IMG/VR virus record: IMGVR_UViG_3300034104_003795
Coordinates: 186,001 to 250,000 of that record
Reading direction: 5' to 3' (one strand)
Length of the DNA stretch: 64,000 nucleotides
The notes beneath the pieces are model-generated. The model had not been told where the DNA came from and made no database searches. It saw only the letters and a list, made by a program, of their open reading frames with translations. Position numbers and translations under genes: made by a program. Every line of letters begins with the position of its first letter. Positions within the stretch are counted from its first letter, which is position 1. Shown one piece after another: positions 1-61,507 of this stretch.

Positions 1-210
1 TCCTAACGCATCAAATGGTGCCGGTTTAATTGCTTGTGGTATTACCTTTTCAACTTCTTGCGCAATTACTCCAATATCATGTCTATCAATTGGATTAAAC
101 CCTAACGAATCAACCATCTCTTTCCAATCAAAATAAACACCTCTTAATTGCTTCAACATTCCCAATGCATCACTAATTGTAGTAATATTTTCTTTCAATC
201 TTTCATCCGA
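1..210 (-). other. Peptidase S74 / intramolecular chaperone autoprocessing domain (partial)
   Basis: SDERLKENI...LRGVYFDW...IGVIAQEVEKVIPQA matches the characteristic S74 signature of phage tail fibres and tailspikes. Confidence 0.88.
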
Positions 211-3200: not shown

Positions 3201-6200
3201 GCCAGCTTTCGCCAATTGTCCAAATTACTTTATCAGCGGTACCAGTAGAATTGTAATCACCCATCATACCACCTCTATTACGGCTTACTAAATAGTTGCT
3301 ATACCACATTCTACCATTTTGCTCCGTTTGATTGAAGTTATTAGTAGATGCAGGGTCTGCATAATATCCACTATTATTTTGGTCATAATATATCGTACCA
3401 TAAACGGCTCCCAATGATTGAATATAATCATATCCTATAATCCAACCATCAACTCTAAGGTTTAAGTTACCACTATCCGAACTCATACGGAATTCTCCAG
3501 CTACACCTATCAAATCGATACCAGAAACAGAATCCCAATGTGTATTCGTTCTGAATCTCATTGTACCACCATTGTAGTAAGGCATTCTTATCTCCGAACT
3601 GAAATCTCCAAAGTATGTAGAGTTTGTATCATAGAATATTGGAGCTTGAACGTAATCAACACCATAAATGTATCTACTTCTTAATATTTGAAGGTCTCCT
3701 GAAATCCAAGAATAAGAATCCGATTCAATATTTGCACTATATCCTTCCGCAACATCCATCACCCCATCGTAATATGCACCATTTTGTATTTTACGAAGAA
3801 CAACTTGTCCATAAGACCATGATGATGAACCATTACCAATTACAATACAATATCTACCATCTTTAAAACCAACCCTTACAGGCTTATCAGTATAACCAAC
3901 TACGTTTGCGTTATAGTTATACCAAGCACCATTCCAGTTATGTCCACCAACAATTACAGTTGCTGCAGCATTTCCATTATATTCATAAATGTCAATAACT
4001 GCGTGAATCATACCATAGTTACCACTTCCACCAGGGAATTTAATAATTACAGCACCAGTTGCACCACCACCTGCACCCCATACCGCATATGGTCTACCAA
4101 CTAAGTTTCTTTGTTTAATACCACCTTGAATTCTTAAAGATGTTGCAGTTGAAGCTGGGTTTAAGAAATATCCAGTATCATCGTAATCATAAAATATACT
4201 TGCTCTTACATCACTAAAATTTGTAGCAGAATTACCACCGCCATTTATACCACCATACAACCAGTTATATCCGGCTGAATAGATACCATTTGGATGCCAA
4301 GATGCATTACCCGTTCCACCAACGTTACCATTACCTCTATAAGAATAAGCGTAAACTTCATTCAGATTAGATGTAGATGCCGGGTCTAAATAATATGCAG
4401 TAGATGTGTAATCATAATAAATTGGAGAACGAACTGAGCCAAAGGAGTATAGGTTAGACGAACTATCCATATATCCTTTTTGTGAGTTTCCAATTCTGAA
4501 CTCAACATAACTTTCAGCACCCAACATTAAGTATGTAGATGAGTAAACACCAGGTGCTCCCCAAGCAGCTCCCAATCTCACATCACTAACACCATTACCT
4601 TCTGCATTTTGAACTCTAAATCCACTATCATTTGTATAAAACTTAACTCTATTAGATGAACCACCTTGTAGTACAAATCCACCATTTGCAGGATTCATAT
4701 AATATGTTGAATCATCTAAATCATAATAAATTGGTGCGTACATTGAGTTATACGAAATAGTAGCATCCGGTTGTAATCTAAAATCTTCACTGTTATTATA
4801 CGCAAATCTTAAATAATCACTTGCTCCATTATCAACTAATAAATTCCATCTATTACTTTCATCTGATGAATAAAGATTTAACCCATCATCCCAACTCGTA
4901 CCACTTGCCACTAAATTAGTTCTTCTAATTCTTGATGTACTATTTGGGTCAATATAATAGTTTCTATCATCATAATCATACATAATACCATGCATCGCAT
5001 ATGTAGATGTAGTTTGATTATAAGTTGTATTGTTACCAATTACACCAGAACCTAATGGAACTCTTGGAACTCCACCCGGATCAGCTACACTATATTCAAT
5101 TGAACCAATATTATCGTTATTAAAGTTCATGTCCGCAGATACAGACATTCTATATCGTACACCATCTAATAATAACATATAGAACCAATATCCACCACTT
5201 GCTAAATCTCTTGGACCAGCTTGATAGATATAATATCCATAAGGATTTTGGTTAGCGTTGTAAGAACCATGTTCAGTATAAAAATACCACATATTCTCTT
5301 GTCCACTATGCCATTCTCTTGAATTGATTACAAATTCTGCAGTACAACCACCATACGGGTTTGAACTATTATCAGTAATTGCACGAGATATCGAAAGTCT
5401 GACAGGAGAACCACCACTATTAAATCTACTAATACTAAATCTTACCCATCTTCTATTACCATTAAATGTACCAGGTACATCAATAAATTGTTCGTTTTGG
5501 TAAGTTTTATTTACCTGTAATGCGTTATATCTAGAAGTTGATAGCGGGTTTGTGTAATATGATGTATTATCTGAATCATAAAATATTGGTGCTCTAAAAT
5601 CAGATGATGCAAATGCTGTACCACTTTCGTTTACAGAGAATAATTCATTTGTTGATTTAATTGCATTATTACCAACTATAAATCTTACACCGGTATCATT
5701 ATTATTAGAGTCAATACTTACACGAACATCACCGGCACTTGCTAAGTTTAATATATTACCAGATGAATTATTTTGTATAACGGTTACATCATAGGTGTTA
5801 TCTCTATAAATACCAGCTGCAGTATCCGATAAATAAAATGCCCCACCATTACCGGCTGCATTTGAATATACCGAACTCTTTGCCCAAACAATACCATCGT
5901 TTCTAACTTCTAATGCAGCTCCACCAGTACCAACTCCACTTACGGCAAATCCTTCATTAGTACCCCCACCTGTCCAAATAATATTTTTAAGTTGTGCTCC
6001 TAAATTCGTAGTAGAAGTGGTTGTTCTAAATCTTGCTCCCCAAGTGTTTGGTTCATTATTTACAGATAATAATCCGTCATTTGGTATATTAATTGAACCA
6101 CCAACATTTAATCTATATGAGTTATTTGGTGCAGTACCTATACCAGTGTTACCTGCTATGTAAGCCTGTTTTGTACCCAAGCTTTGGTCAGTTCCAGAGA

Positions 6201-9045
6201 ATAAATAAAAATCAACTATATTATTTTCATCTTCAATATAAACTGGATAAACACTATCACCGGCATCATTTGAATATCCTTCAATATACAACATCACGGA
6301 ATTACCACTATTCCACGCACTATTGTAAGTTCCACCGCCTAATGAGAAGTTTTTAATATGACTAGCTACAGTACTACCAGCAGTACCACCCGTTATACTT
6401 CTATGAGTTAAAAGGCCTGTATTTGATATTGTAAATCTATTTGCATTATTTGTTACATCATAAAGAACAAACGAACCATCTGCATTTATAATAGAATAAT
6501 CGGAATCATTATTAGTATCCGTTAAATTAATTCGTGGATATGTGTAAGATAAAGTTAAATCACCATTAAGTGTAAGTCCAGCAAAAGTTGGAGAATCAGT
6601 TGTTCTTATATTCTGATTCATTAAATAAACTTCGGTTGCACCTTGTCCAGTATCAATTGTACCAGTAAGAACTACGTTTCCACTTACCGATAAAGTATTA
6701 TCAGCTGTCCATCTATCATTTGATTCATCCCAATAGAATGATACAGTTGATGATGAACCTCTTCTAACTTCAATACCCGCATTTTCAGTTGGTGTACCCG
6801 TTGTGAAGTTTGAATTAAGAGTTATAATATTATCCGCTAATAGGATTGTTTCAGTATTAATCGTAGTTGTTGTACCACTAACTGTCAAATCACCAGTAAT
6901 AATTGCATTACCAGTAACGGTTAATAAAGTTCCATTAAAAGTTAGATTACTTTCAACAGTTCCGTTTGGTGCAGTACCATTTAATGTAATTACACCATTA
7001 TCAGTTGTACCAGTTAATGCCAATAAACCAGAAGAACCCGAAGTACCTTGTGTACCAGAGCTTCCAGATGTTCCAGATGACCCACTACTTCCAGATGAAC
7101 CACTACTTCCACTACTTCCAGATGTGCCACTACTTCCACTACTTCCAGATGTGCCACTACTTCCACTACTTCCACTACTTCCAGATACGCCAGATGAACC
7201 AGAACTTCCAGATGTTCCACTACTTCCAGATGAACCACCACTGCCTCTTGTTCCAGATGAACCAGAGGTACCAGAGCTACCACTTGTACCGGATACTCCA
7301 GATGAACCACTACTTCCAGAACTTCCACTTGAACCACTTTGTCCAGATGAACCAGAAGAGCCTGATGTACCAGATGAACCTGAAGAACCAGATGTTCCAA
7401 CTGCGCCATCTTTACCACTACTTCCTGAACTTCCACTTGAACCACTTTGTCCAGAACTACCAGAACTTCCCGAAGAACCAGATGTACCACTACTTCCAGA
7501 TGTACCAGCCGTTCCACCACTTGAACTTGTTCCAGATGAACCAGAAGTTCCCGATGAACCAGATGAACCAGATGTGCCACTGCTTCCAGATGAACCACTA
7601 CTTCCACTAGCTCCACCCAATCCACTAGAACCAGAACTTCCAGATGTTCCACTACTTCCTGATGAACCAGAAGAACCAGATGAGCCACTACTTCCTGATG
7701 AACCAGATGAACCACTTCCACCACCGGCTCCAGTTAAACCAGATGAACCCCCACTTCCCGATGTTCCAGATGAACCCGATGAACCAGATGTACCATCTTT
7801 ACCAGATGTACCAGATGTACCAGAAGAACCTGATGTACCAGGTGTTCCCGTTCCTCCAGATATACCAGAACTTCCCGATGAACCGGCTGAACCTCCACTT
7901 CCTGAAGTTCCGGAAGTACCAGAACTACCCGATGAGCCACTTATACCAGATGTACCATCTTTACCAGATGTACCAGAAGAACCATCTTTACCGGATACTC
8001 CACTACTTCCAGATGAACCGGATGTACCAGAAGAACCCGATGTGCCACTGCTTCCAGATGAACCAGAACTTCCCGATGAGCCTCCACTACCAGATGTACC
8101 AGAAGAACCAGAAGAACCACCACTTCCCGATGTTCCAGAAGAACCTGATGAACCACTACTTCCGCTACTTCCACTACTTCCAGATGAGCCAGATGAGCCA
8201 GATGTGCCACTACTACCCGAAGTTCCAGAAGAACCAGATGTGCCACTGCTTCCAGATGAACCACTGCTTCCAGATGAACCTGAAGTTCCCGATGAACCTG
8301 CTGAACCAGTTGAACCAGAGCTACCACTTGTACCAGAAGTACCTGAAGTACCTGATGTTGCTGCTGCAAATCTTCTACTAATTCTACCAGTAGTTGTGTT
8401 TAATACCAACACCTCATTTGTTGTGTTATCGGTTGGTATTGTATCAGGAGTTCCAACAAATATAGAACCACTAATTGCTACACTTCCAGTAAATTCATGC
8501 TTATCAGAAGTTGCATCACCAAATTTATTTGAACCAGATGAATATATTACAGAAGATGAAATTAATGTTGTGCTTATTTCAGTTGATGTGATTTTACCAC
8601 TAACATTAATATTACCAATTATATTAGCATTTCCGGTTACATTTGCATTTCCAGTTAAAGTTAATCCACCACTTATATTTGTTGGTACATTTACTACCAA
8701 TCCGTTATTAGGTGAAATTTGTGCAATTGCAGAACCTGATTTTATTCTATTGATATCGCCAATTGAATCGGCTTGTATATTAAATAACCCACTACCATCA
8801 CCTCTAAATATTGATGCTGATATTGAGCCTGTTATTAATGTATTTGCATTAATTGTAAGTGATTCCGAAGATGGAGTATCAATTATTAATGTTTCAATTT
8901 TAGAAGCAGAAAAAGGTATCCCATTTATGATACTAATTGAATTTGGAGAAGCATTTATAACAGGGCTTCCACTAACATAAAGTGATATTACGCTAGAACT
9001 TACTTGATTTAATCCATTTGGGTCAATACCTATAAAACTACTCAT
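1..9045 (-). CDS. Giant tail fibre / receptor-binding protein, more than 3015 aa, with C-terminal intramolecular chaperone (Peptidase S74) domain; 3'-partial, runs off the window start
   Basis: ATG at 9045 (MSSFIGIDPNGLNQ...). The frame reaches base 1 in register (...APFDALG). The track lists no stop-terminated ORF from this ATG, consistent with an unbroken frame. Contains a Gly-X-Y Ser/Thr tract, about 15 YYxDPxxTS spacer motifs, and ...YSSDERLKENITTISDALGMLKQLRGVYFDW...GVIAQEVEKVIP at the end. Confidence 0.88.
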   Translation of the reverse strand, partial: MSSFIGIDPNGLNQVSSSVISLYVSGSPVINASPNSISIINGIPFSASKIETLIIDTPSSESLTINANTLITGSISASIFRGDGSGLFNIQADSIGDINRIKSGSAIAQISPNNGLVVNVPTNISGGLTLTGNANVTGNANIIGNINVSGKITSTEISTTLISSSVIYSSGSNKFGDATSDKHEFTGSVAISGSIFVGTPDTIPTDNTTNEVLVLNTTTGRISRRFAAATSGTSGTSGTSGSSGSTGSAGSSGTSGSSGSSGSSGSSGTSGSSGTSGSSGTSGSSGSSGSSGSSGSSGSSGSSGTSGSGGSSGSSGTSGSGGSSGSSGSSGSSGTSGSSGTSGSSGSSGVSGKDGSSGTSGKDGTSGISGSSGSSGTSGTSGSGGSAGSSGSSGISGGTGTPGTSGSSGTSGTSGKDGTSGSSGSSGTSGSGGSSGLTGAGGGSGSSGSSGSSGSSGSSGSSGSSGTSGSSGSSGLGGASGSSGSSGSSGTSGSSGSSGTSGSSGTSSSGGTAGTSGSSGTSGSSGSSGSSGQSGSSGSSGSSGKDGAVGTSGSSGSSGTSGSSGSSGQSGSSGSSGSSGSSGVSGTSGSSGTSGSSGTRGSGGSSGSSGTSGSSGSSGVSGSSGSSGSSGTSGSSGSSGTSGSSGSSGSSGSSGSSGTSGSSGTQGTSGSSGLLALTGTTDNGVITLNGTAPNGTVESNLTFNGTLLTVTGNAIITGDLTVSGTTTTINTETILLADNIITLNSNFTTGTPTENAGIEVRRGSSSTVSFYWDESNDRWTADNTLSVSGNVVLTGTIDTGQGATEVYLMNQNIRTTDSPTFAGLTLNGDLTLSYTYPRINLTDTNNDSDYSIINADGSFVLYDVTNNANRFTISNTGLLTHRSITGGTAGSTVASHIKNFSLGGGTYNSAWNSGNSVMLYIEGYSNDAGDSVYPVYIEDENNIVDFYLFSGTDQSLGTKQAYIAGNTGIGTAPNNSYRLNVGGSINIPNDGLLSVNNEPNTWGARFRTTTSTTNLGAQLKNIIWTGGGTNEGFAVSGVGTGGAALEVRNDGIVWAKSSVYSNAAGNGGAFYLSDTAAGIYRDNTYDVTVIQNNSSGNILNLASAGDVRVSIDSNNNDTGVRFIVGNNAIKSTNELFSVNESGTAFASSDFRAPIFYDSDNTSYYTNPLSTSRYNALQVNKTYQNEQFIDVPGTFNGNRRWVRFSISRFNSGGSPVRLSISRAITDNSSNPYGGCTAEFVINSREWHSGQENMWYFYTEHGSYNANQNPYGYYIYQAGPRDLASGGYWFYMLLLDGVRYRMSVSADMNFNNDNIGSIEYSVADPGGVPRVPLGSGVIGNNTTYNQTTSTYAMHGIMYDYDDRNYYIDPNSTSRIRRTNLVASGTSWDDGLNLYSSDESNRWNLLVDNGASDYLRFAYNNSEDFRLQPDATISYNSMYAPIYYDLDDSTYYMNPANGGFVLQGGSSNRVKFYTNDSGFRVQNAEGNGVSDVRLGAAWGAPGVYSSTYLMLGAESYVEFRIGNSQKGYMDSSSNLYSFGSVRSPIYYDYTSTAYYLDPASTSNLNEVYAYSYRGNGNVGGTGNASWHPNGIYSAGYNWLYGGINGGGNSATNFSDVRASIFYDYDDTGYFLNPASTATSLRIQGGIKQRNLVGRPYAVWGAGGGATGAVIIKFPGGSGNYGMIHAVIDIYEYNGNAAATVIVGGHNWNGAWYNYNANVVGYTDKPVRVGFKDGRYCIVIGNGSSSWSYGQVVLRKIQNGAYYDGVMDVAEGYSANIESDSYSWISGDLQILRSRYIYGVDYVQAPIFYDTNSTYFGDFSSEIRMPYYNGGTMRFRTNTHWDSVSGIDLIGVAGEFRMSSDSGNLNLRVDGWIIGYDYIQSLGAVYGTIYYDQNNSGYYADPASTNNFNQTEQNGRMWYSNYLVSRNRGGMMGDYNSTGTADKVIWTIGESWPLGNMYGLAYDYGSGYGHHLALRDNGATYSRFGFAGGAFIGGTVSVGGAMYAPIYYDSNDGGYYGDFASTSRTNYIVGNRIKLVNNVNNDPRWDFSAYVVEAQHWYGNNSSMTMYMGEGSNTIQVPGSGGIRPVIIYDYNNAGYYLNMDGTSNLYAVTDYTRRAAFNLGRERGNRRDITSDTNHWTGTNGWGTSYGTWASAWEGGFSGWDIWGGGTDHPQGGGYVHAQGIVSGQHYATGGGGTAYGWMMVGAHDAGSRWWLRGKWGGTTYPWYEIVLYGRNVGGGDLYAGYWYDGNNTGYYIDPNGSSQMSAVYSDNWFRAQGCAGFYFQSYGRGLWSPECEGNPYGHVATNGGGRNGWGGYGIFSRYTLMSTGGDNVGMHDTARGWVWYMEGGRLQMHWAGNRRMVTESHGVYFDADARASIFYDHDTGYYFDGNGTSNMNRFTDRTKASMGNTAKYNSPRWDFTGDSNYWVGSMGWGTTDLNSVWNWGSGFFDSWGNPGNQPAGTSHWTGIQTAHYTCGYGCGYGWQMVGGPISGLWFRNVWSSPSGWRKIAMYGLNEYSNDFYATIVYDSNNTGFYSDPNGTSALSRITVDSEIISRNGCGRIYLPGNLHIDSYCGYDIYMQYYTNRPTRYYGYIEMNGYGGYGFGEIYSNIYYDRNDSGYRLDPNGTSQLHYVLANNWFRPQGCTGVYWESYGRGIWSPECEGNPYGHIATYGGGRNGWYGYGVGSRYTLMSTLGDNIGLHDSARGWIWYMSGAELNMYYAGSRRMVTTGWGVYVDQYLEAGGSLRAPIFYDNQDTGYYLDQHNTDNQGLRIRGGTLHGPNWWWGAYLRVGANNHIGDWAQMFTSNGNLHIDARPGYPMYLNWHTGNTVLVNSDIQARIYYDLDDTGYYFGSSAGDGRFRYTNTNGGFSQSNNQFQFNVNRGYYMNDTANLQAYSEGNNSAFLSWHKTGVFATNMGLDGDNWIRIGGWSMSNNRWQLNASGDMYAAGNVVAYSSDERLKENITTISDALGMLKQLRGVYFDWKEMVDSLGFNPIDRHDIGVIAQEVEKVIPQAIKPAPFDALG
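7029..8358 (-). repeat. Coding low-complexity (G-S-S/G-T-S)n tract, about 440 codons, in the 1..9045 fibre gene
   Basis: Imperfect 9-bp periodicity (ccagatgaa/ccactactt/ccagatgta on +), Gly at every third codon, GC higher than the flanks. Confidence 0.92.
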
Positions 9046-9738: not shown

Positions 9739-10182
9739 TTAAGGTTTAATTGGCCATTCAATATTAAACGGGTCTATTTGGGTTGATATATCTCTTAAAT
9801 TTTGTCTGTATTCTGTCCAAACTGATTTGATTTCAGTTGGTATGTCCGATAATTGAGTCCAATCACACTCTAATAATAGTTGATTTCTAATATCTCTAAC
9901 TTCAGCCCATTTTTCTTCTATTCTCGTATTGATTAATTCCTGGCTTGCATCGGTTGCTACCCAATTTTGATAATAAACTCCTTCAATTAATATAGGAGTT
10001 TCTTCGGACACTATTTTTGTGTAGTTATTTGGTTTAGGAGTCTGTCTTACTTCGTACATATCCCATGATAATAAATCATTTTCAGTAAGTTCCGATGGGA
10101 ACGTTACATTTTTATTATCCGTTTTTAAATTTTCAATAGAATACGGATATTGAATTTCGCTATTTATAATTCTTAAATACAT
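9739..10182 (-). CDS. Phage tail (fibre) assembly chaperone
   Basis: C-terminal WAEVRDIRNQLLLECDWTQLSD...WTEYRQNLRDI...IEWPIKP is the signature of the Phage_tail_APC family. Confidence 0.85.
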   Translation of the reverse strand: MYLRIINSEIQYPYSIENLKTDNKNVTFPSELTENDLLSWDMYEVRQTPKPNNYTKIVSEETPILIEGVYYQNWVATDASQELINTRIEEKWAEVRDIRNQLLLECDWTQLSDIPTEIKSVWTEYRQNLRDISTQIDPFNIEWPIKP

Positions 10183-11083: not shown

Positions 11084-11088
11084 AACTA

Positions 11089-14000
11089 TTAACTAAAATT
11101 TTTACCACTTACAAATCCATAATATGTAGTACCACCATCATAAGTATAGAATACTAAAATATCAGTTCCAACAGAAGTTAGTGTTGGTGCACTTCCACCC
11201 GCCCAATCAACATTTACTGGCCAAGTTATTGTGTATGCTCCCGCATTTACAGTAACTAATGTAAATCCAAATGCGTTTGAAGCAGGTGCGTTACTAAATG
11301 CAACACTCGCATTACCATTAAATTGTCTTCTGAAGTTGTTACCAGTTGAAAGGTCTAATGTTACACTTCCACCGGTTCCTTGGTCAGAATATGTTTCTCT
11401 AAATGTATTTGCCGCAATAGATGTTGTTGATATTACATTACCAGTTACAGTTAATGTACTACCATTAAATGTTAAATTTGATTCAACATTTGCTCCAAAT
11501 GCAACAGCGTTGTAAGTTAATATACCATCTTCGGTATTACCAGATAATGGGAAACCAGATGTACCAGATGTACCCGATGTAAATCCAGGTGCAGATGTAC
11601 CAGATGTACCACTTTGTCCGGATGTACCAGATGTAAATCCTGGAGGTGTTGTACCAGATGTACCGGCTGTGCCACTTATTCCAGAAGTTCCTGATGTTCC
11701 AGATGTGAAGCCAGGAGGAGTTGTACCCGATGTACCAGCAGTACCACTTTCTCCAGAACTACCCGATGTACCGGATGTGAAGCCCGGAGGCGTTGTACCC
11801 GATGTACCAGATGTACCAGTTTCACCAGATGTTCCCGATGTAAAGCCCGGAGGTGTTGTACCCGATGTACCAGATGTTCCTGCTTCACCGGTTGCGTTTG
11901 TACCATCTTTACCAGATGTACCACTACTACCAAAATATGTTCCATCAAATCCAGAAGTTCCAGATGTACCATTCGTACCTAATCCAGAAGTTCCAGATGA
12001 GCCACTCACACCAGATGTACCAGATACTCCAGAAGTACCACTACTTCCAAATAACGTACCATCTTTACCAGATGAACCAGATGTACCCGTAGTTCCACTC
12101 ACACCAGATGTGCCGCTTTCTCCAGATGTACCAGAAGTACCACTTATACCCGATGTTCCAGATGAACCGAAATAAGTTCCATCAAATCCGGAAGAACCAG
12201 ATGTACCAGATGACCCGGATGTACCCGATGTGCCACTTTGTCCAGATGTACCTGCAGTTCCACTTTCTCCAGAAGTTCCTGATGAACCAAAGAATGTTCC
12301 ATCTTTACCAGAAGTTCCAGATGAACCAGAAGAACCCGCGCTACCGTCAGTTCCACTTATTCCAGAACTACCCGATGTGCCGCTTTCTCCAGATGAACCA
12401 GAAGTTCCAGATGAACCAAAGTATGTTCCATCTTTACCAGAACTACCCGATGTACCACTTACACCAGAAGTACCACCCGTTCCTGCACTTCCCGATGAGC
12501 CAGTTGAACCAGATGAACCCGATGTGCCACTACTACCTGATGTTCCAGAAGAACCAAAGAAAGTTCCATCTTTACCAGATGTACCACTTTCACCAGATGT
12601 ACCAGAAGAACCAGATGTACCATCGGAACCTGATGTACCCGATGTGCCACTTTCTCCAGAAGTACCAGAAGAACCAGATGAACCTTCTGCCGAAGTACCA
12701 GATGAACCAGATGAGCCTCCGGTGCCACTAGTACCACTTTCACCAGAAGTACCACTACTTCCAGAACTTCCTGCTGAACCACTTTCTCCAGATGTACCTG
12801 ATGTACCATGAGAACCAAAGAATGTTCCGTCTAAACCAGATGTACCCGAAGTACCATCTTGTCCAGATGAGCCAGATGAACCACTACTTCCTGATGTACC
12901 CGAAGTGCCATCTTGTCCAGATGTACCAGAAGAACCAAAGAATGTTCCATCTTTTCCACTTGTTCCAGAAGTACCATCGGTACCCGATATACCAGATGAA
13001 CCAGATGAGCCGCTACTTCCTGATGTACCCGTTGTACCAGAACTTCCAAAGAATGTTCCATCCAATCCGCTTGTACCGGATGTGCCGCTTTCACCAGATG
13101 TTCCAGATGTTCCTGTTTCACCGGATGTACCATCGGTACCAGATGTGCCAGTTGAACCCGAACTACCACTACTTCCAAAGAATGTTCCATCTACACCACT
13201 TGTTCCAGAAGAACCAGAAGTGCCAGATGTTGCTGATGTTCCAGAACTACCAGATGACCCGGATGTTCCCGAACTTCCAAAATATGTTCCATCTAAACCA
13301 GAACTTCCTGATGTACCAGATGAGCCACTGCTTCCAGAACTACCAGATGAACCACTACTTCCACTGCTTCCAGAAGTTGCAGATGTACCGGATGAACCAG
13401 AACTTCCAGATGTACCAAATGAACCATCGGTACCAGAACTACCCGATGAACCTGCAGTACCAGTTGAACCAGATGTACCTGAAGTGCCATCTGCTCCTGA
13501 ACTTCCACTACTTCCACTGCTTCCAGATGAACCAGATGAGCCAGTTGTACCAGATGAACCACTACTTCCACTTGAACCACTACTTCCAGATGTGCCATCA
13601 GTACCAGATGTACCAGATGAGCCACTACTTCCAGATGTTCCATCAGAACCAGTTGTACCAGATGAGCCACTGCTTCCAGATGAACCAGATGAACCGGCAC
13701 TACCACTACTTCCTGAACTTCCACTTGAACCAGAGCTACCAGATGTACCTGCAGAGCCGTTCGTACCAGAAGTTCCTGCCGAACCAGATGAACCACTACT
13801 TCCAGAAGTTCCTGATGAACCATCTTCTCCGGATGTACCAGAGCTTCCCGATGTACCAGATGAACCTGCTGAACCAGTTGTACCAGAACTACCAGAAGTA
13901 CCAGTTGTACCAGATGAACCACCACTACCATCGGAACCAGATGACCCGGATGTTCCAGAGCTTCCCGATGTTCCTGCTGAACCAGCACTACCAGATGAGC

Positions 14001-17000
14001 CAGAGGTTCCTGATGTACCAGATGAACCCGCAGTACCACCAGTACCAGAAGATGCCGATGTACCACTACTTCCCGATGTGCCTCCACTACCAGATGAACC
14101 AGAAGTTCCAGATGTGCCGCTTGTGCCAGAGGTTCCAGAACTTCCTGATGTGCCGGCAGTACCGCCACTACCAGATGATGCGGATGTACCACTACTACCC
14201 GATGTACCAGAGGTTCCAGAGCTACCAGATGTTCCCGATGACCCGGATGTTCCAGATGAACCAGAACTTCCAGATGAACCAGATGTACCAGAAGTACCAG
14301 AAGTTCCTGCAGAACCAGTTGAACCAGAGCTACCAGATGAACCACCACTTCCAGATGAACCGGATGTACCACTACTACCAGATGTTCCTGAACTACCCGA
14401 TGAACCAGATGTGCCAGATGTGCCACTGCTTCCCGAAGTTCCCGATGAACCAGATGAACCGGATGTTCCAGATGAACCAGAACTACCATCTGAACCGGAA
14501 GTACCAGATGTGCCGCTCGTGCCGCTACTACCCGATGTTCCAGAAGAACCAGATGAACCAGATGTTCCACTACTTCCAGAACTACCAGATGAGCCTGAAC
14601 TTCCAGATGAACCAGAACTTCCAGATGTTCCTGTTGTTCCAGAACTTCCACTGCTTCCTGAACTACCAGATGAACCAGATGAACCATCTATACCAGAACT
14701 TCCACTACTTCCCGAACTACCAGATGAACCGGAACTTCCAGATGTACCAGATGTTCCCGTTAATCCGGATGAACCAGAAGAACCAGATGAACCACCTGTT
14801 CCAGATGAACCAACCGCAGCTGCTACGTTTCTATATCCTAATTTTTTAGTTATTGGGTCCCACGTTACAACCTCATCATATGATGCCGATACGATTCCAC
14901 CAAGCATTATACTACCACTAACACCTAAACTTCCACTAATTGTAAGTGATGCGTTTATTGTTTGATTTGTATTGATGTTTAAGAATGAAGATGTGTCAGT
15001 ATTTGCAGAATTAAGTGCAAATGAAGCAGTTAATGCGTTTACAGAATAAGAAATACTATCCATTCCTAACGGCCCATCTACACCGGTTGATAATATATAA
15101 GATGCCGTAAGTGAAGTTTGAGCCGCTCCACCGTTGATTGTTACTAATACGCCATCAGAACCAGATGAAATCACATCTACCCCAGAACCACTAAAGTTTA
15201 TCTTTGCAGTTTGAGATTTTACCAACGAACTGGTATGATAAATAAATAATTCAGTTCCACCACCACCACCGTTTAATGCAAAAGATGCGGTTAATGCGTA
15301 AGAAGAACTTACAGCACTAAACACTGCCATTGATGATGTTTGATTGTTTCTCACATATTGTGATGAATCTCCCAATGAAGCCGATAATGATGCAAGTGAT
15401 GCTGAATCAAATCCTTGAACGGATACAGCAACTTCAGCTCTACGTGCATATGATGCAGAAAGAACTTCACCAAATACTCTATCACCAGGAATTGTACCAT
15501 TAATCAATGAGCCACCACTACCAATCACAACATGTCCGGAAGTTAATCCAGCAAATTTAATTTGGATTGTATCTTCATCAATTGATTTAACAGTGCCAGG
15601 TATAATTTGGTCTTCCGAACCAGTTGCGTACACTTGAACCATAGGATATAAAATTCCTAAGTTGTGTACAATTGTCAAATCGCTTACATTACTAAACGAT
15701 ACAGTTTCAGTTAATGATGTTTCAGGTTGAGGTACAAAATATCCTCTATCTTCATCATATCGTAAAATATCGTATTCAGCACTTGCAGTAGGTCCTACTC
15801 CTTGAAAATTATATGTACCCAAGAACGAACCACTAATAGTTGGTGCAAATATTGTACCACTTGCAGATATGTTATGTGCAGTTATATCATATACAACATC
15901 CAAATCACCATCTATTGATGCCGATGTACTTACTCTGAATCCTAAATCAGGAGATATTTCAGCGAATACAGATCCGGATTTTAATATAGCCGTTTCAAAT
16001 GCTAAATTAGCAATATTGATATTTCTTAATCCACTACCATCACCAACATATCTACTACCGGATTGAAGTACAACATCAGAACCAGTTACAAATATTCCAC
16101 CACTCACTGCTAATGAACCAGAGAATATTCTAACGGATGTATTTATTTCCAATCCTTTGTTTGGAGAAATTACAGCTTCAACAGATCCAGATATAATTCT
16201 ATCTAATTGTAAATCTTCTAATGCTTCGGCAGGGATATTAAATAATCCACTACCATCACCATCGTATCTTGCTGCCGTAATTGGTACGTTTACATCTAAT
16301 TTAGTTGGGTCAATAATTGCTACACCAGAACCAGAGTTAATTTTAGCCAACTCTAAGTTTTCAATCGCATCAGGTGGGATGTTAAATAATCCACCACCAT
16401 CTCCAATAAATAAAGATGCAGTTAATGAACCGGTAATTGATACCGAACCGGTGAATTGTGAACCACTACTAGCATTTACTATAAACTTATCACCACTAGC
16501 TACCGATGCCGTTGCCGAACCACTTGCTATCAATGGAGCTGCGGCTGCTTGTACATTTGTTAAAAATCTACCATCACCAAATACAAATCCTCTTGCAGTT
16601 AAATCATCTGCGGTCAATGAACCACTAATAGAAACACTACCAGTAAATTGAGAACCAATGTCAGAACCAGTTGCAGCGGTTCTTACAATAAAATTATTAC
16701 CACTTTGTACCGATGCAGTTGCAGAACCACTTGCTATTAAAGGTGCAGCTGTTGCTACTACATTGGTAATAAATCTACCGTCCCCAAACAAGAAATCCGT
16801 TGCTCTGATGCTTCCACTAACTTCAATTGAACCGGTGAATTGAGAACCAATTTGAGAACCGGTTGCCGCCGTTGTTATTATAAATACATTACCACTTTGT
16901 ACCGATGCAGTTGCAGAACCACTTGCTATCAATGGAGCTGCGGCCGCTACTACGTTTGTAATAAATCTACCATCTCCAAATAAGAATTCAGTTGCTCTGA

Positions 17001-20000
17001 TACTTCCACTAACTTCAACCGAGCCAGTGAATTGAGAACCAACTAGCCCACCGGTAAATGGAGTTATTACTCTAAATCCATCAACTGGACTTACTGATGC
17101 GGTTACTGAACCGGATTTGATTTCGGTAGATATTAATGCATCTTCGGTTAATGCGGAACGAGGGATATTTCGTAGATAAGTACCTTCTCCATAATATGAA
17201 GAACCGGAACTTAAAAATAAACCACCACTTGCAATCTCATTAATATATAAACTTCCACTTATATCTACCGAACCAGTAAACCTAGACCCAATTTGTGTAT
17301 CAAATATCAAATTTGGATTACCATCTACTATATTTATAACACCCGCCATTGATGAATGGAATTGGCAATTATAATATAACGTATTTGGTGCACTTCCAGA
17401 AACCAAGAATGTTATTTGTCCAACATCTTCACCATTATTAGTAACCCAACTATTATAAAAATTAGTATCACCAGTACCAGATGTTTCATTAATCCAAAAT
17501 GGATGCCCACTTGCATTTATATTAAAAATATATTCATAATTTCTATGCAATGTAATTGTGGGATTTGAACCACTTGCTGCTCCGCTAAATACATACTCAC
17601 CACTTCCATTATTTATTACATTAAATACGTTATCAAATACTAAAGAAGATGTAAATGGTGTTTTAACTTTAAAACCATCAACTGGACTTACCGAAGCCGT
17701 TACTGAACCAGATTTAATTTCTGCAGATATTAATGCATCTTCAGTTAATGCAGAACGTGGTATATCAAATAACAATCTACCAGATGAACTGATAAATGAA
17801 CCACTCGCCATAAAGATGCTTCCACTAAATGTAGAACCACTACTTACCGATTGAACTAAAAATCCAAATTCAGGAGTTACCGATGCAGTGATACTACCAG
17901 TTGCAATACGGAATACTTCTTCCGATAATGCGGAACGAGGTATATCAAATAATCCTTTACCACTACCACTAAACATTGAAGATGAAACAGGTCCAGATGT
18001 ATTTAAACTACCTGTAATTTGTGTATTTCCTATGAATGTTATTTCAGGTGCTATTTCTAAAAAATCAACTATATTAAGTTGCCCTACCATTGATGAATGC
18101 AATTGGCAATTGTAATATAGAATATTAGGTGAACCAGAATACGGAGTGAATACAATATCCCCACTATCATCACCATTATTCGTAATACTTTGACTTACAT
18201 TATTAGATGTACCGGTTGAATTTATAAATTTAATCCATAAAGGATGTCCTACTGCATTAACATTAAATGTATATTCTACACCTCTTACCAATGTTAATGT
18301 TGGATTTGAACCGGATATTAATCCATTACTTACAACATATGCACTACTCCCATCGTTTGTTACATATATTGTGTTATCTATTAATTCGGTAGGCAATGGT
18401 CTTGCCGAAGATGATACTACAAAACTACCATCAATTCTAGAATGAACATTTACTTCAAATCCGTTGTTAGGTGAAATAGATGCCGTTGCACTACCACTAA
18501 AGATTTTTGTTGAATCAATTGCTAAATTAGCTAATGTAATATTATTAAGGAATCTACCATCACCAATAAAATAAGAACCACTTGTTGAAGTTACATCACC
18601 TCTTACTAAAAGGCTTCCAGTTATATCAACGCTTCCGGTAAATTCAGAACCACTATCCGCAGATTGTACTCTAAAACCAAATACAGGTGAAACTGATGCA
18701 GTTACACTACCACTTGCTATTTTATTTGGAGCAAATGATAAAGCCGATTCAGGTATATCAAATAAATTTCTACCAGAACCACTAAACGATGAACCACTTT
18801 GTAGTTCTATATTTCCATGTGCAAATACACTACCACTTATATTAATTGAGCCGGTAAATTGAGAACCCAACAAAGTAGATTCAACAATAAATCCAAAATC
18901 AGGCAATGCCGAAGCGGTTACCGAACCAGATGCAATTCTAAATATTTCTTGAGATAATGCTGAGAATGGTATATCGGTTAATCCAGCACCACTACCACTA
19001 AATACCGATGCAGAAACACCTGATTTAAATAATGATGATTGATTTACTTTTAAAGAACCAGTTACAACTAAATTAGATTTTATATCAGTTGAACCCGTTA
19101 CAATTAAATAATCTCTAACGGTTACACCGGTATTTACTAAAAACCCTTTATCAGGAGAAATAGATGCTGTTGCTGAGCCACTAAAGATTTTAGAAGTATC
19201 TAAATCAGATAATGCCGCTACAGGTATATCAAATAATTTTTTACCACTACCACTAAAAGACGAACCAGTTATTACTCTTACCTCTCCATAAAATGTAGAA
19301 CCACTTTCTATTGAAGTTACTACGAATCCTTGATTTGGAGCCACCGAAGCGGTTACACTACCACTAACAATTTTCTCACTAAATAATGCATCAGGAGCAA
19401 GTGCTGTTCTCGGTATATTAAATAATCTTTCTCCACTACCACTAAAAGATGAGCCAGATGATATTTCTACACTTCCACTTACTAATATTGATGATGAAAA
19501 TTCTGCTCTATTAGCCCCTTCTAATCTAAATCCATATACAGGAGAAACAGATGCAGTTACAGATCCAGATACAATTCTCGTTCCTTCTATTGATGGTACA
19601 TTTCTTAATCTACTACCATCACCTTCAAAAGAACCGCTAAATTCAGGTGAAAATATTCTTTCCGCAGTAAGTGAACCAGATACTCTAACACTACCGGTTA
19701 TATCACTACCTCTTTGTAAAGATTCAACTCTAAATCCATAATCAGGAGAAACCGATGCAGTTACACTACCACTTGCAATTCTATATGCATCACCGGTAAA
19801 TGCCGATTGCGGAATATCAAATAATCCTCTACCACTACCAGAGAAGAATGAACCACTTCCTAAAAATACGCTACCACTTACCCCTAAACTTCCTGTTATA
19901 TTAGTTTTTCCAATAAATGTAATTTCGGCAGGTATTTCAATTGCATTCACAACATTGATAGCCCCTTGCATTGCACTATGAAACTGACAAGTGTAGTATA

Positions 20001-48476: not shown

Positions 48477-48480
48477 AACA

Positions 48481-48512
48481 CAAATATACAAAAAAAGTTT
48501 GGAATTACCAAA
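48481..48512 (-). promoter_or_regulatory. Bacteroidota-type primary-sigma promoter
   Basis: Coding strand TTTG-N20-TATATTTG-TGTT-ATG matches the established -33 TTTG / -7 TAnnTTTG consensus with 19-21-nt spacing. Confidence 0.75.
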
Positions 48513-60754: not shown

Positions 60755-61507
60755 TTATTTTTTAAATACCGAAACTCCTTTTTCTTTTACAACTTCTCCG
60801 GCACAATAATTAGCCCAATCAATAGATTCTTCTACATTATTAGAATCCAAATACCTGGATACAAATCCGGCTACAAATGTATCACCCGCTCCACTTACAT
60901 CGGCATTTTGAATTCTTTTAGTTCCAATTATCTTACCTCTATAACTTGCTCCCCTACCGTCCAACGTAATGATACATTTATTATATAACCAATCAGTATC
61001 TCTAATAATAGAATCATTATTTTGAGCTTCAAATCTGTTTATTTTTATAAAGGATGTGTTTTTACACCAATCACCTAAATGCTTTTTGGTATCTACTATC
61101 GTAAATTTGGCCATAGATGATATCTTATCAATATCTTCTTCGGTTAGGAATCCCTTACAATAATCCGATATAACAACCGCATCATATTTTACCAAATCCG
61201 GCAAATCGTAGATATCAATTCTATTTGTAGTATCATTTTCATCAACTCGCAAATATAATTCATTTGTATCTTTGTTTACATATCGTGTTTTAGTAATATT
61301 ACCTTTATCAAAATATGTATCAACATCCAATCCCATAGCTTCTAAATTAGATGCTGTGTTGCCCGCCATTCCTTTACTCCAAACTTTTAATTCATCTATT
61401 GGTAAGAAAACTGGTCCATTTCCTTCTGGAGATTTTCTACTTGTTATGCCATACCAAAAAATATCGGTACAAACCTCTCCAATAACTAAAACTTTATACT
61501 TACGCAT
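60755..61507 (-). CDS. hldA: D-glycero-beta-D-manno-heptose-7-phosphate kinase (HldE/RfaE domain I, PfkB fold)
   Basis: VIGEVCTDIFWYGITSRKSPEG (HldE: [22 protein letters not shown]), VISDYCKGFL, DVSGAGDTFVAG. Confidence 0.85.
   Translation of the reverse strand: MRKYKVLVIGEVCTDIFWYGITSRKSPEGNGPVFLPIDELKVWSKGMAGNTASNLEAMGLDVDTYFDKGNITKTRYVNKDTNELYLRVDENDTTNRIDIYDLPDLVKYDAVVISDYCKGFLTEEDIDKISSMAKFTIVDTKKHLGDWCKNTSFIKINRFEAQNNDSIIRDTDWLYNKCIITLDGRGASYRGKIIGTKRIQNADVSGAGDTFVAGFVSRYLDSNNVEESIDWANYCAGEVVKEKGVSVFKK

What the first reader, a model, noticed from the sequence alone, without database searches (positions are those of the whole stretch)
11550..14815. Proline-free Gly-X-Y tracts made almost entirely of Ser/Thr
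Seen: Gly at every third residue with X/Y mostly Ser or Thr over about 1090 aa here, about 440 aa at 7029-8358, and shorter tracts at 42600-42875 and 43245-43495. Known: Pro-poor Gly-X-Y chains form stable collagen helices only with other stabilisers (e.g. Thr glycosylation in hydrothermal-vent worm cuticle collagen), or instead fold as polyproline-II bundles (snow-flea antifreeze protein, T-even gp38). Inference: these are very long flexible fibres or PPII sheets and the most obvious acceptors for the encoded heptosyltransferase. An ice- or surface-binding role is also conceivable.
Basis: partly seen in the sequence, partly recalled or inferred. Interest (0 to 1): 0.6.

Follow-up and report, generated by a model that had tools for sequence, protein, structure and literature searches.

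The report
Proline-free collagen shafts in phage fibres
A widespread, uncultured lake-water phage has giant tail fibres whose roughly 1000-residue shafts are collagen-type Gly-X-Y repeats made almost only of serine and threonine, and it also encodes an enzyme family known to attach heptose sugars to protein serines, which may be what holds such a collagen together.

Summary
ORF 11089-22278(-), 3729 aa, holds a 1055-aa Gly-X-Y tract (nt 11647-14811). Its composition is S 408, G 348, T 173, with no Pro inside the repeat runs and 4.4% charged residues. Uninterrupted runs reach 70 and 74 triplets. Similar tracts lie at 7021-8352, 42588-42884 and 43233-43484.

The host genes are giant tail-fibre genes in the structural module of a 274-kb T4-like freshwater phage. 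Thirty distinct IMG/VR orthologues keep a tract of median 1025 aa with 0-8 Pro, and one relative has 271 unbroken triplets. Independent lake assemblies reproduce the tract exactly.

The best reading is a homotrimeric collagen-like shaft about 300 nm long. A polyproline-II bundle, an ice binder and a disordered linker all fit less well.

The "heptosyltransferase" (61889-63046) belongs to the TibC/Aah protein Ser-O-heptosyltransferase family (TIGR04414, 271.6 bits, cut-off 200). It sits beside split HldE genes and further glycosyltransferases. Two distant phage lineages carry the same enzyme within 4 kb of G-T-S collagen genes. Heptosylation of the tract is therefore plausible (about 0.45) but unproven.

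Overall this is a new variant of a known kind, phage collagen-like fibres.

The parts
11089..22278 (-). P0001, giant tail-fibre gene (3729 aa). About 2480 aa of Ser/Gly-rich beta-type repeats with three cupredoxin-like inserts, then the Gly-X-Y tract, then cap and tip.
   Evidence: Complete orthologous frames of 3387-3467 aa in IMG/VR. The G001 orthologue is 4539 aa.
11647..14811 (-). Main Gly-X-Y tract, aa 2490-3544 (1055 aa). The only Pro are 6 in the TTPPGF linkers near its C-terminal end. Predicted triple-helical shaft of about 300 nm.
   Evidence: PF01391 at 326 bits with 10 stretches. Tiled with no differences by contigs of three lake metagenomes.
13282..14811 (-). Proximal sub-tract, aa 2490-2999. 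Runs of 70, 13, 74 and 10 triplets, separated only by single Gly-to-Ala positions.
11896..13281 (-). Distal sub-tract, aa 3000-3461. Holds 13 one-residue insertions (G-x-D-G-T-[FYL]-F-G-S-S) spaced 13-15 triplets apart, which I read as regularly spaced kinks or hinges.
   Evidence: The relative G001 has the same motif with N in place of D.
11557..11895 (-). Transition segment, aa 3462-3574. Short G-T-S runs alternate with TTPPGF linkers.
11092..11556 (-). Post-collagen cap motif and C-terminal beta-sandwich tip domain, aa 3575-3729. Probable trimerisation/registration and receptor-binding end.
   Evidence: AF2 pLDDT above 90 for aa 3624-3729. 231 BFVD phage matches, including tail fibres and collagen-repeat proteins. 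tblastn hits to annotated tail fibres. Cap motif shared with P0002 and the ORF at genome 135222.
1..9045 (-). P0002, second giant fibre gene (3015 aa in the window; the stop-to-stop frame is 3069 codons in the genome). Its 3' end lies outside the window.
7021..8352 (-). Gly-X-Y tract of P0002, aa 232-675 (441 aa in runs, 1 Pro).
   Evidence: PF01391 at 161 bits.
28..210 (-). Peptidase_S74 intramolecular chaperone domain of P0002 (aa 2946-3006), a marker of trimeric phage fibres and spikes.
   Evidence: 57.6 bits, cut-off 22.
39495..43655 (-). P0003, third fibre-like protein (1386 aa). Carries two short Pro-free G-T-S tracts at nt 43233-43484 and 42588-42884.
9739..10182 (-). Phage tail-fibre assembly chaperone, two genes downstream of P0001.
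   Evidence: PF16778 at 56.7 bits, cut-off 26.6.
61889..63046 (-). TibC/Aah-family (BAHT) protein Ser-O-heptosyltransferase, 385 aa. Candidate modifier of the tracts.
   Evidence: TIGR04414 at 271.6 bits, cut-off 200. TibC structure 4rap at E 2e-53. Four iron-finger Cys, Asp110, Thr226, Lys230 and Trp305 are conserved; Arg286 is not.
60755..61889 (-). Split HldE. Heptose-7-phosphate kinase-like gene at 60755-61507 and heptose-1-phosphate adenylyltransferase-like gene at 61500-61889. Together they would supply ADP-heptose.
   Evidence: TIGR02198 at 92.8 bits and TIGR02199 at 110.9 bits. Both are the best hits but lie below the equivalog cut-offs.
63037..64000 (-). 3' part of a 722-aa fusion of GT4, sugar-methyltransferase-like and GT25-like domains. 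It continues beyond the window (genome 249037-251205).

Best explanation
The tracts are the collagen-like shaft modules of giant homotrimeric tail fibres of an uncultured, cosmopolitan freshwater T4-like jumbo phage (274 kb).

In P0001 three chains would be brought into register by the conserved post-collagen cap and the C-terminal beta-sandwich tip. They would then zip into a Gly-X-Y triple helix of about 300 nm (1055 aa at 0.286 nm per residue). The proximal half would be stiff. The distal half carries 13 evenly spaced one-residue insertions that I read as hinges. The result is a very long, semi-flexible reach for a receptor-binding tip.

The helix has no proline and almost no charge pairs, so the two usual stabilisers are missing. 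I think the most likely substitute is O-glycosylation of the serines, above all the Ser that fills 76% of Y positions. This would happen on unfolded chains, carried out by the phage's own TibC/Aah-type heptosyltransferase. That enzyme would be fed by phage HldE-like enzymes, and the glycan would be extended by the neighbouring GT4/GT25/methyltransferase protein. The closest parallels are galactosyl-Thr at Y in vent-worm cuticle collagen and the glycosylated BclA collagen region.

Shown: the repeat, its conservation, the tail-fibre context, the enzyme family, and gene linkage in other lineages.
Inferred: the triple helix (about 0.8), and heptosylation of the tract itself (about 0.45).
For: Repeat and family:
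- PF01391 scores 326, 161 and 69 bits in the three fibre proteins.
- Uninterrupted runs of 70 and 74 triplets here and 271 triplets in relative G001.

Protein-level constraint:
- Six Ser codons are used and the 9-bp period matches only 61%.
- A natural 9-nt (one-triplet) deletion variant is present in three lake runs.

Conservation:
- 30 distinct orthologues have a tract of median 1025 aa, 0-8 Pro and 1.6-4.7% charged residues. Their tip domains are down to 44% identical to P0001's.

Fibre and trimer context:
- Peptidase_S74 in P0002.
- Assembly chaperone PF16778 at 9739-10182.
- PHROG tail-fibre families.
- Tip domain shared with annotated tail fibres and with 231 BFVD phage proteins, several named as collagen-repeat proteins.
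- Conserved pre- and post-tract motifs in three proteins.
- T4-like structural module: gp23, gp20, gp21, gp15.

Glycosylation:
- TIGR04414 above its cut-off and a TibC match at E 2e-53 with the iron-finger Cys and catalytic Asp conserved.
- TibC modifies Ser, not Thr, and accepts peptides (PMC4358343).
- HldE halves are adjacent. GT4-MT-GT25 and a radical-SAM gene lie upstream on the same strand as the late genes.
- Only 4 of 50,697 phage records have this enzyme. Mel-JY01 has a 1016-aa G-T-S frame 1.7 kb from it, and LR756501 has a Pro-free G-T/S-S protein 3.6 kb from it plus giant GTS fibres.
- Two MCP relatives without the enzyme have no collagen hits.
- The two other >=96%-complete records tested in the clade (G003, G004) also carry it.
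- (Gly-Pro-Thr)10 folds only when the Thr are galactosylated (PMC11923368).
Against: - There is no structural evidence for a triple helix.
- Ser and Thr are low-propensity residues for collagen (my knowledge of host-guest peptide data, not tested here). An unmodified helix could be marginal, or the tract could be unfolded.
- The link between enzyme and tract is by association only, and most co-occurrences come from one clade.
- LR756504 has a TibC-like gene (32% identity) but no collagen hit.
- Known TibC/Aah substrates are beta-helix 'strand-loop-strand' repeats, not collagen (and the TIGR04414 name).
- The rest of P0001 is also 17% Ser and could be the real acceptor.
- Arg286, one of TibC's four sugar-binding residues, aligns with Val.
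- No GmhA gene is present and GmhB is not clear.
- The phage is uncultured, so virion location is inferred.
Confidence: 0.68

Rival explanations
1. The shaft is a true collagen-like triple helix but is not glycosylated. Water-mediated hydrogen bonding by Ser/Thr hydroxyls, terminal trimerisation domains and cool lake temperatures are enough to stabilise it. The heptosyltransferase acts on something else: the Ser-rich beta repeats of the same fibres, another virion protein, or a host surface protein.
For: - TibC/Aah substrates are beta-helical repeats.
- P0001 outside the tract is 16.9% Ser and carries about 20 repeats of an SGS-x-T-A-S type motif.
- LR756504 has the enzyme without any collagen hit.
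- Bacterial collagens rich in polar residues are thought to rely on hydration networks (PMC8968730).
- The habitat is lake water.
Against: - The enzyme gene is tightly linked to G-T-S collagen genes in Mel-JY01 and LR756501.
- Y is Ser rather than Thr in every orthologue, which matches the Ser-only specificity of TibC.
- The phage carrying its own ADP-heptose enzymes suggests a large demand for the sugar.
Confidence: 0.25
2. The tract is an extended, mucin-like, heavily O-glycosylated but non-triple-helical spacer. In other words, it is a disordered or single-chain PPII 'bottle-brush'.
For: - There is no Pro and only about 4% charged residues.
- Ser/Thr have low triple-helix propensity (my knowledge).
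- A glycosylation gene cluster is present.
- (GPT)10 is a random coil when unmodified.
Against: - A disordered Ser/Thr spacer has no need for Gly at exactly every third residue over 70-271 triplets.
- It also would not need single-triplet indels.
- It would not need a tract length held near 1000 aa while the adjacent tip domain diverges to 44% identity.
- It would not need conserved cap motifs at both ends.
Confidence: 0.1
3. The tract folds back into a polyproline-II/polyglycine-II bundle or sheet, as in snow-flea antifreeze protein or the T-even gp38 sandwich. It might then serve ice or surface binding.
For: - The repeat is period-3, Gly-rich and Pro-free.
- The distal 40% has breaks every 39-45 residues that could in principle allow folding back.
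- The habitat includes cold lakes.
Against: - The proximal half has 210- and 222-residue runs without any turn-capable break, and a relative has 813 residues.
- Gly is 33% and rare at X/Y positions. Known bundles use helices of roughly 6-12 residues with much higher Gly content (my knowledge).
- The flanking domains are those of trimeric fibres.
- Nothing in the data bears on ice.
Confidence: 0.04
4. The tract is not a real feature. It is a mis-assembled or non-coding simple repeat.
For: Repeats are hard to assemble. Many alternative joints appear when reads from related sequences are laid at 90% likeness.
Against: - Exact tiling by contigs from three independent studies, with pieces also present in a metatranscriptome.
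- One continuous frame joins conserved N- and C-terminal domains.
- Orthologues are present in 139 viral contigs.
- Codon usage is diverse.
Confidence: 0.01

Closest known systems
Collagen-like tail-fibre proteins of phages, e.g. Prochlorococcus phage P-SSM2 orf028 ('Bacteriophage collagen', Smith et al. 1998; PMC1079782)
   Same: - Gly-X-Y tracts inside T4-like tail-fibre-like proteins.
- P-SSM2 orf028 even shares the cupredoxin-like insert domain, at 55% identity over 100 aa.
- The tip domain is shared with many phage 'collagen triple helix repeat' proteins.
   Different: - P-SSM2 orf028 is Pro-rich (76 Pro in 267 repeat residues; G-P-T and G-P-P triplets) and short.
- Here there is 0 Pro in 972 repeat residues, X/Y are Ser/Thr, the tract is about 4 times longer, and a protein heptosyltransferase is encoded. 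P-SSM2 was not among the 4 phage records with a TibC-like match.
Prophage collagen-like proteins of E. coli O157:H7 (EPclA; PMC3368898)
   Same: A phage tail-fibre-type protein with a collagen domain between trimerisation domains. The triple helix was shown by CD, with Tm 42 C.
   Different: In EPclA, X is Pro about half the time and about 22% of residues are charged. Its stability is explained by Pro and salt bridges, and it is not glycosylated. The present tract lacks both stabilisers.
Glycosylated Thr-rich collagens: Riftia cuticle collagen (Gal-Thr at Y) and Bacillus BclA (GPT repeats carrying a rhamnose-containing oligosaccharide)
   Same: A hydroxy-amino acid takes the place of hydroxyproline, and O-glycans are thought to stabilise the helix (and my own knowledge). 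As with BclA, a methyltransferase and several glycosyltransferases are encoded nearby.
   Different: - Those collagens keep Pro at X and glycosylate Thr.
- Here Y is Ser, there is no Pro, and the candidate sugar is heptose transferred from ADP-heptose.
- Modification has not been shown here.
Bacterial autotransporter heptosyltransferases TibC/Aah (BAHT; PMC4358343)
   Same: The phage enzyme passes the family model and keeps the iron-finger cysteines and the catalytic Asp. The family hyper-heptosylates serines in long repetitive adhesin passengers, in the cytoplasm.
   Different: - The known substrates are beta-helical autotransporters (AIDA-I, TibA) of proteobacteria.
- Here the enzyme is phage-encoded and has no autotransporter beside it.
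- It is joined to or fused with GT4 domains.
- The candidate substrates are fibre proteins.
Snow-flea antifreeze protein and the T-even gp38 polyglycine-II sandwich
   Same: Period-3, Gly-rich, Pro-poor sequence.
   Different: Those are compact bundles of short helices with turns and far more Gly (my knowledge). The runs here are 70-271 triplets long with Gly only at position 1.

Membership tests
Collagen triple-helix repeat proteins (PF01391 / collagen-like proteins) | Gly at every third residue over long runs | tested here: met
   Runs of 70 and 74 triplets, and 972 aa in runs of at least 5 triplets. 271 triplets in a relative.
Collagen triple-helix repeat proteins (PF01391 / collagen-like proteins) | Score above Pfam's gathering threshold | tested here: met
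   326.1, 161 and 68.7 bits against a cut-off of 27.2.
Collagen triple-helix repeat proteins (PF01391 / collagen-like proteins) | Usual stabilisers: imino acids at X/Y and/or Lys-Asp/Glu charge pairs. These are typical of the family rather than strictly defining. | tested here: not met
   0 Pro in the runs and 46 charged residues in 1055. Orthologues have 0-8 Pro and 1.6-4.7% charged residues.
Collagen triple-helix repeat proteins (PF01391 / collagen-like proteins) | Three chains actually form a triple helix (CD band, cooperative melt, protease resistance) | not testable with these tools
I did not attempt it by another tool.
Collagen triple-helix repeat proteins (PF01391 / collagen-like proteins) | Adjacent trimerisation or registration domain | tested here: inconclusive
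   Conserved cap motifs lie before and after the tracts. P0002 has Peptidase_S74. The tip domain folds confidently, but the cap has low confidence as a monomer.
Phage tail fibre | C-terminal domain homologous to known or annotated fibre tips | tested here: met
   tblastn hits to annotated tail fibres in 16 phage records. 231 BFVD matches at E<=1e-3. phrog_19200 and phrog_3904.
Phage tail fibre | Position in the structural module with a fibre assembly chaperone | tested here: met
   PF16778 at 9739-10182. gp15-like, gp23, gp21, gp20 and terminase genes lie on the same strand.
Phage tail fibre | Presence in the virion, attached to the baseplate | not testable with these tools
   The phage is uncultured and there is no proteome or EM.
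BAHT (TibC/Aah) protein O-heptosyltransferases, for ORF 61889-63046 | Family model above the curated cut-off | tested here: met
   TIGR04414 at 271.6 bits against a cut-off of 200. LPS heptosyltransferase models reach only 24 and 15.5 bits.
BAHT (TibC/Aah) protein O-heptosyltransferases, for ORF 61889-63046 | Iron-finger Cys339/342/358/370 and catalytic Asp110 | tested here: met
   All five are aligned and identical (with residue numbering from PMC4358343).
BAHT (TibC/Aah) protein O-heptosyltransferases, for ORF 61889-63046 | Sugar-binding Arg286, Trp305, Thr226, Lys230 | tested here: inconclusive
   Thr226, Lys230 and Trp305 are conserved. Arg286 aligns with Val in the pairwise alignment.
BAHT (TibC/Aah) protein O-heptosyltransferases, for ORF 61889-63046 | Cognate autotransporter substrate encoded nearby | tested here: not met
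   No autotransporter family was found among the window ORFs scanned. The neighbours are sugar-nucleotide and glycosyltransferase genes.
BAHT (TibC/Aah) protein O-heptosyltransferases, for ORF 61889-63046 | Transfers heptose from ADP-heptose to protein Ser | not testable with these tools
   This needs an enzyme assay or mass spectrometry.
Polyproline-II / polyglycine-II bundles (snow-flea AFP, gp38) | Short Gly-rich helices joined by turns, with Gly also at X/Y positions | tested here: not met
   Unbroken runs of 210 and 222 residues, with Gly at 33.0% and almost only at position 1.

The most novel reading that the evidence does not exclude
A cosmopolitan clade of freshwater jumbo T4-like phages builds tail fibres with shafts about 0.3 micrometres long. 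The shafts would be a previously unstudied kind of collagen, free of proline and nearly free of charge. Its triple helix would be made foldable and stable by serine O-heptosylation, extended by further sugars. The enzyme would be a phage-encoded member of the autotransporter heptosyltransferase family, fed by phage-made ADP-heptose. If so, this is a new chemistry for collagen stabilisation, the first role for BAHT enzymes outside bacterial adhesins, and a new case of phage virion glycosylation.
Probability: 0.4. Interest if true: 0.8.

Novelty: new variant of a known kind. Interest (0 to 1): 0.62.

Why it matters
Collagen research explains triple-helix stability by imino acids, charge pairs or, rarely, glycosylated threonine. 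Here a natural collagen-type sequence as long as type I collagen (348 Gly) has none of the first two. It is conserved across dozens of abundant lake phages, and its genome supplies a candidate serine-glycosylation pathway. That makes the question of how a Pro-free collagen folds directly testable with a few recombinant constructs.

For phage biology, it points to fibres several times longer than T4's, and to a so-far undescribed phage use of the TibC/Aah heptosyltransferase family. My paper searches found no link between that family and phages.

It also flags an annotation problem. In Microcystis phage Mel-JY01 the equivalent collagen gene is overlaid by opposite-strand ORF calls. A recent review still describes phage collagens as about 18 residues long.

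Tried and rejected
- Homotrimer fold of a complete short G-T-S module with both flanks (P0003 aa 215-430, three copies). I did not hand it, or any other Gly-X-Y tract, to another folding tool, so there is no structural model of the helix.
- A degenerate DNA pattern scan of viral contigs for Ser/Thr-type Gly-X-Y runs. The prevalence of such tracts across all IMG/VR was therefore not measured.
- AF2 on the cupredoxin-like insert. pLDDT was 45.5, too poor for a fold search. The PDB sequence search gave only insignificant AmoB hits.
- Foldseek of the tip domain against the PDB. No match at E<=0.001; the weak top rows were phage tailspikes.
- Cyanophage host marker psbA is absent.
- GmhA is absent. 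GmhB gave only a 13.8-bit HAD hit. The phage does not carry the full ADP-heptose pathway.
- No paper links TibC-type enzymes to phages, and none on Mel-JY01 is held in the library.
- The plus-strand ORFs over the tract are rejected as mirror frames.
- Ice binding: nothing in the data supports it.

Full report
**What is there**

The window is G000:C1:186001-250000 of a 273,997-bp IMG/VR virus record. Almost all genes run on the minus strand. Two giant ORFs cover the finding:
- 11089-22278 (P0001, 3729 aa).
- 1-9045 (P0002, cut by the window; the stop-to-stop frame is 3069 codons in the genome).

A script over the translations places the Gly-X-Y tracts as follows:

| Protein | aa | nt | Repeat residues | Pro |
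|---|---|---|---|---|
| P0001 | 2490-3544 | 11647-14811 | 972 aa in runs of at least 5 triplets | 0 in the runs |
| P0002 | 232-675 | 7021-8352 | 441 aa | 1 |
| P0003 (ORF 39495-43655) | two tracts | 43233-43484 and 42588-42884 | 180 aa | 0 |

- The main tract is 1055 aa, not about 1090.
- Its composition is S 408, G 348, T 173, D 26, A 24, F 23, E 14.
- X is S 45% and T 43%. Y is S 76%.
- The only prolines are in the TTPPGF linkers at the C-terminal end of the stated interval. Six lie within the 1055-aa tract, and a fourth PPGF follows just after it.

**Regularity and irregularities**

The proximal half consists of runs of 70, 13, 74 and 10 triplets. They are separated only by single Gly-to-Ala positions of the form GTS-A[ST]S-G.

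From aa 3000 to 3449 there are 13 one-residue insertions with the motif G-x-D-G-T-[FYL]-F-G-S-S, spaced 13-15 triplets apart. In the nomenclature of PMC11923368 these are G3G interruptions, and the Gly-to-Ala sites are G5G interruptions.

At DNA level all six Ser codons are used, and the 9-bp period matches only 61% over 109 copies. The periodicity is therefore maintained at protein level and is not a fresh slippage product.

**Is it real sequence?**

Contigs of three independent lake-water metagenomes tile 10400-14830 with no differences and with overlapping ends. A metatranscriptome library holds pieces of the tract with no differences, for example 12389-13115.

The same runs show a 9-nt, one-triplet deletion variant at 12583. 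They also show a 4+2-nt variant exactly at the two-residue AE break (aa 3197-3198). These are the kinds of change a period-3 constraint would tolerate. I note this with caution, because related sequences were also laid at the 90% likeness threshold.

The MCP region is found in runs from at least 18 studies of lake or freshwater samples, six of them RNA libraries. This is a common freshwater phage.

**What the genes are**

The window is a T4-like structural module:
- gp23 major capsid protein at 44158-45822.
- gp21-type protease at 50005-50598.
- gp20 portal at 52777-54552.
- Large terminase at 55063-56658.
- gp15-like gene at 36582-37640.

The nearest capsid proteins are those of an uncultured 484-kb phage (55% identity), Flavobacterium phage immuto (52%) and Microcystis phage Mel-JY01 (52%). 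psbA is absent.

Several results mark P0001 and P0002 as fibre proteins:
- Both hit PF01391 (326 and 161 bits) and many PHROG tail-fibre families.
- P0002 ends in a Peptidase_S74 intramolecular chaperone domain.
- A tail-fibre assembly chaperone (PF16778) lies at 9739-10182.
- The last ~105 residues of P0001 fold confidently as a beta-sandwich (pLDDT above 90).
- That model has 231 matches at E<=0.001 among predicted viral structures. All listed matches are phage proteins. Many are named tail fibre, and several are named collagen triple helix repeat.
- By sequence, the same domain hits annotated tail fibres of Roseobacter, Microcystis, Pseudomonas and other phages.
- The PDB gave no significant match.

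The tracts are bracketed by conserved motifs in three different proteins of this genome. Before the tract there is a D/S-E-V-x-V-x-N/D...T-x-x-I/L-G motif. After it there is L-x-A-L/V-T-G ... N-G-x-I/L-T ... S-N-L-T-F-N/D-G ... V/L-T-G. This looks like a module with caps, not a loose linker.

**Conservation**

The genome holds five ORFs with Ser/Thr-type Gly-X-Y, 2061 repeat residues in all.

A search with the P0001 tip found 139 relatives in viral contigs. Among 30 distinct orthologues whose tip is 44-100% identical:
- The terminal tract has a median of 1025 aa (range 591-1319).
- Pro is 0-8 per tract.
- Gly is 32-35%.
- Charged residues are 1.6-4.7%.

Y is dominated by Ser in all of them. 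The orthologue in record G001 has 1332 repeat residues with one unbroken run of 813 residues, which is 271 triplets.

A length held near 1000 residues while the neighbouring tip domain diverges to 44% identity argues that length itself is selected.

**Which structure?**

Four features are what a three-chain collagen helix demands, because Gly must pack at the axis:
- Strict Gly at position 1 over hundreds of residues.
- Almost no Gly at X/Y positions.
- Indels of one triplet.
- Trimeric-fibre flanking domains.

They are not what a disordered Ser/Thr spacer or a beta structure needs. Polyproline-II bundles of the snow-flea or gp38 type use short helices joined by turns and far more Gly (my knowledge). 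The 210-, 222- and 813-residue unbroken runs exclude that for at least the proximal half.

At 0.286 nm per residue (an established collagen parameter), the P0001 tract would be about 300 nm. That is the length of a type I collagen helix and roughly twice a whole T4 long tail fibre (my recollection of its length, about 145 nm). It would sit on top of about 2480 further residues of fibre. I read the 13 evenly spaced one-residue insertions as hinges; this is inference.

I could not model the helix. I did not send that chain or other Gly-X-Y tracts to any other folding tool.

**The stability problem and the heptosyltransferase**

Known phage and bacterial collagens rely on Pro at X and on charged residues:
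- EPclA has Pro at X about half the time and about 22% charged residues, with Tm 42 C.
- Across bacteria, X is 19% Pro and Y is 32% Thr.
- P-SSM2 orf028 has 76 Pro in 267 repeat residues.

The present tract has neither stabiliser. The literature gives one alternative: (Gly-Pro-Thr)10 is a random coil until its Thr are galactosylated.

ORF 61889-63046 hits Pfam GT9 only weakly (19.6 bits). However, it passes the NCBIfam equivalog model for autotransporter strand-loop-strand O-heptosyltransferases (TIGR04414, 271.6 bits, cut-off 200). It scores only 24 bits on LPS heptosyltransferase I. It matches the TibC crystal structure at E 2e-53.

In that alignment the following TibC residues are identical: the four iron-finger cysteines (339, 342, 358, 370), the catalytic Asp110, and Thr226, Lys230 and Trp305. 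Arg286 aligns with Val, and the stereoselectivity position Pro300 aligns with Gly.

TibC heptosylates Ser but not Thr, does so many times per substrate, and accepts synthetic peptides.

The genes around it fit a glycosylation unit:
- Directly downstream are the two halves of HldE, the heptose-7-P kinase-like and heptose-1-P adenylyltransferase-like genes. These are the best hits but lie below equivalog cut-offs.
- Directly upstream, partly beyond the window, are a 722-aa protein with GT4, methyltransferase and GT25-like domains, and a radical-SAM/SPASM protein.
- All lie on the late-gene strand, just upstream of the terminase and head genes.

**Association test**

Only 4 of 50,697 phage records have a TibC-like gene.

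| Record | TibC-like gene | Collagen genes |
|---|---|---|
| Mel-JY01 | 48% identity; fused with a GT4 domain in a 1226-aa protein | A 1016-aa G-T-S frame (PF01391 220 bits) lies 1.7 kb upstream |
| LR756501/LR756503 (735 kb) | 39% identity; fused with GT4 | A 699-aa protein with a Pro-free G-T/S-S tract lies 3.6 kb away. The genome has giant fibres with 990 G-T-S residues per 1055-aa window |
| LR756504 | 32% identity | No collagen hit |
| Immuto and LR756508 (MCP relatives, controls) | None | No collagen hit |

Within the clade, the two other >=96%-complete records tested (G003, G004) carry the enzyme, as do three partial ones. Two half-complete fragments do not, which says little.

This is suggestive linkage in about three lineages. 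It is not proof, and most co-occurrences are not independent.

The Ser-rich beta repeats of the fibres are an equally legitimate acceptor, because known BAHT substrates are beta-helices. P0001 outside the tract is 16.9% Ser.

**Verdict**

| Claim | My estimate |
|---|---|
| The observation | Confirmed |
| Collagen-like triple-helical shafts of giant tail fibres | About 0.8 |
| Some fibre or virion protein is O-heptosylated | About 0.7 |
| The Gly-X-Y serines themselves are the acceptors and need the sugar for stability | About 0.45 |
| Polyproline-II sheets or ice binding | Not supported |

Phage collagen-like fibres are known. The new elements are:
- The Pro-free, charge-poor Ser/Thr composition at about 1000 residues.
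- Its conservation in an abundant freshwater clade.
- Its pairing with a phage-encoded BAHT-type glycosylation cluster.

Noticed in passing
window 19909-20313, 18025-18429, 17284-17688 (P0001 aa 656-790, 1284-1418, 1531-1665): P0001 carries three copies of an approximately 130-aa insert. It has invariant G-H-P-x-W-I and Y-Y-x-C-Q-x-H-S-x-M (His, Cys-x2-His-x2-Met). That is the ligand pattern and spacing of a type-1 (blue) copper site, as in amicyanin (my knowledge). The same domain sits between two Pro-rich collagen tracts in P-SSM2 orf028, and it matches fibre or baseplate genes in 233 cyanophage records. The AF2 model was all-beta but too poor to search (pLDDT 45.5), and there was no significant PDB sequence hit. 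A copper-binding domain in a tail fibre would be unusual.
   Followed up: partly
window 63037-64000 and beyond (genome 249037-253570; L121:1037-5570): Upstream of the heptosyltransferase lies a 722-aa fusion of GT4, Methyltransf_24/TylF-like and GT25-like domains, followed by a 665-aa radical-SAM/SPASM protein. A GT4 domain accompanies the TibC-like domain in all three phage lineages. It is fused to it in Mel-JY01 and LR756501.
   Followed up: partly
L104 (Microcystis phage Mel-JY01, PP395634.1) 1-3052: The GenBank annotation places two opposite-strand hypothetical CDS (1-651 and 739-2298) over a 1016-aa plus-strand G-T-S collagen frame (PF01391 220 bits). Only its last 177 codons are called as a gene. 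The frame starts at base 2, so the gene probably wraps around the record's ends.
   Followed up: partly
window 23289-35843 (-): A 4184-aa ORF lies between the gp15-like region and P0001. It has no Gly-X-Y tract and no family above cut-off, only sub-threshold fragments. It is the largest gene in the window and its function is unknown.
   Followed up: no
window 12583 and 12681-12689: Contigs from three lake metagenomes carry a 9-nt (one Gly-X-Y triplet) deletion at 12583. Contigs from two of them carry a 4+2-nt deletion at the two-residue AE break of the tract, which would bring it back into register. These may be strain variants or related phages.
   Followed up: partly
genome 135222-138479 and 255530-262972 (outside the window; L102, L121:7527-14966): Two further ORFs have Ser/Thr Gly-X-Y tracts. 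One is a 1086-aa frame with 432 repeat residues. The other is a 2479-aa protein with 36 repeat residues and a CBM_5_12 carbohydrate-binding module.
   Followed up: partly
window 57395-60343 (-): A 982-aa protein with an N-terminal nucleotidyltransferase (NMN-adenylyltransferase-like) domain and DUF5661 lies between the sugar genes and the terminase. Mel-JY01 has a similar 'cytidylyltransferase like protein' in the same position.
   Followed up: no
L109/L115 (LR756501.1 about 410800-415200): In the 735-kb phage, one 2830-aa fibre frame mixes a Pro-rich G-P-Q / G-P-T tract with G-T-S triplets. A neighbouring 3488-aa frame is Pro-free G-T-S. Both collagen chemistries therefore coexist in one virion gene set.
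   Followed up: no
window 47157-48491 (-): A 444-aa N6/N4 DNA methylase with a weak sigma-70 region-4-like C-terminus is embedded among the head genes.
   Followed up: no
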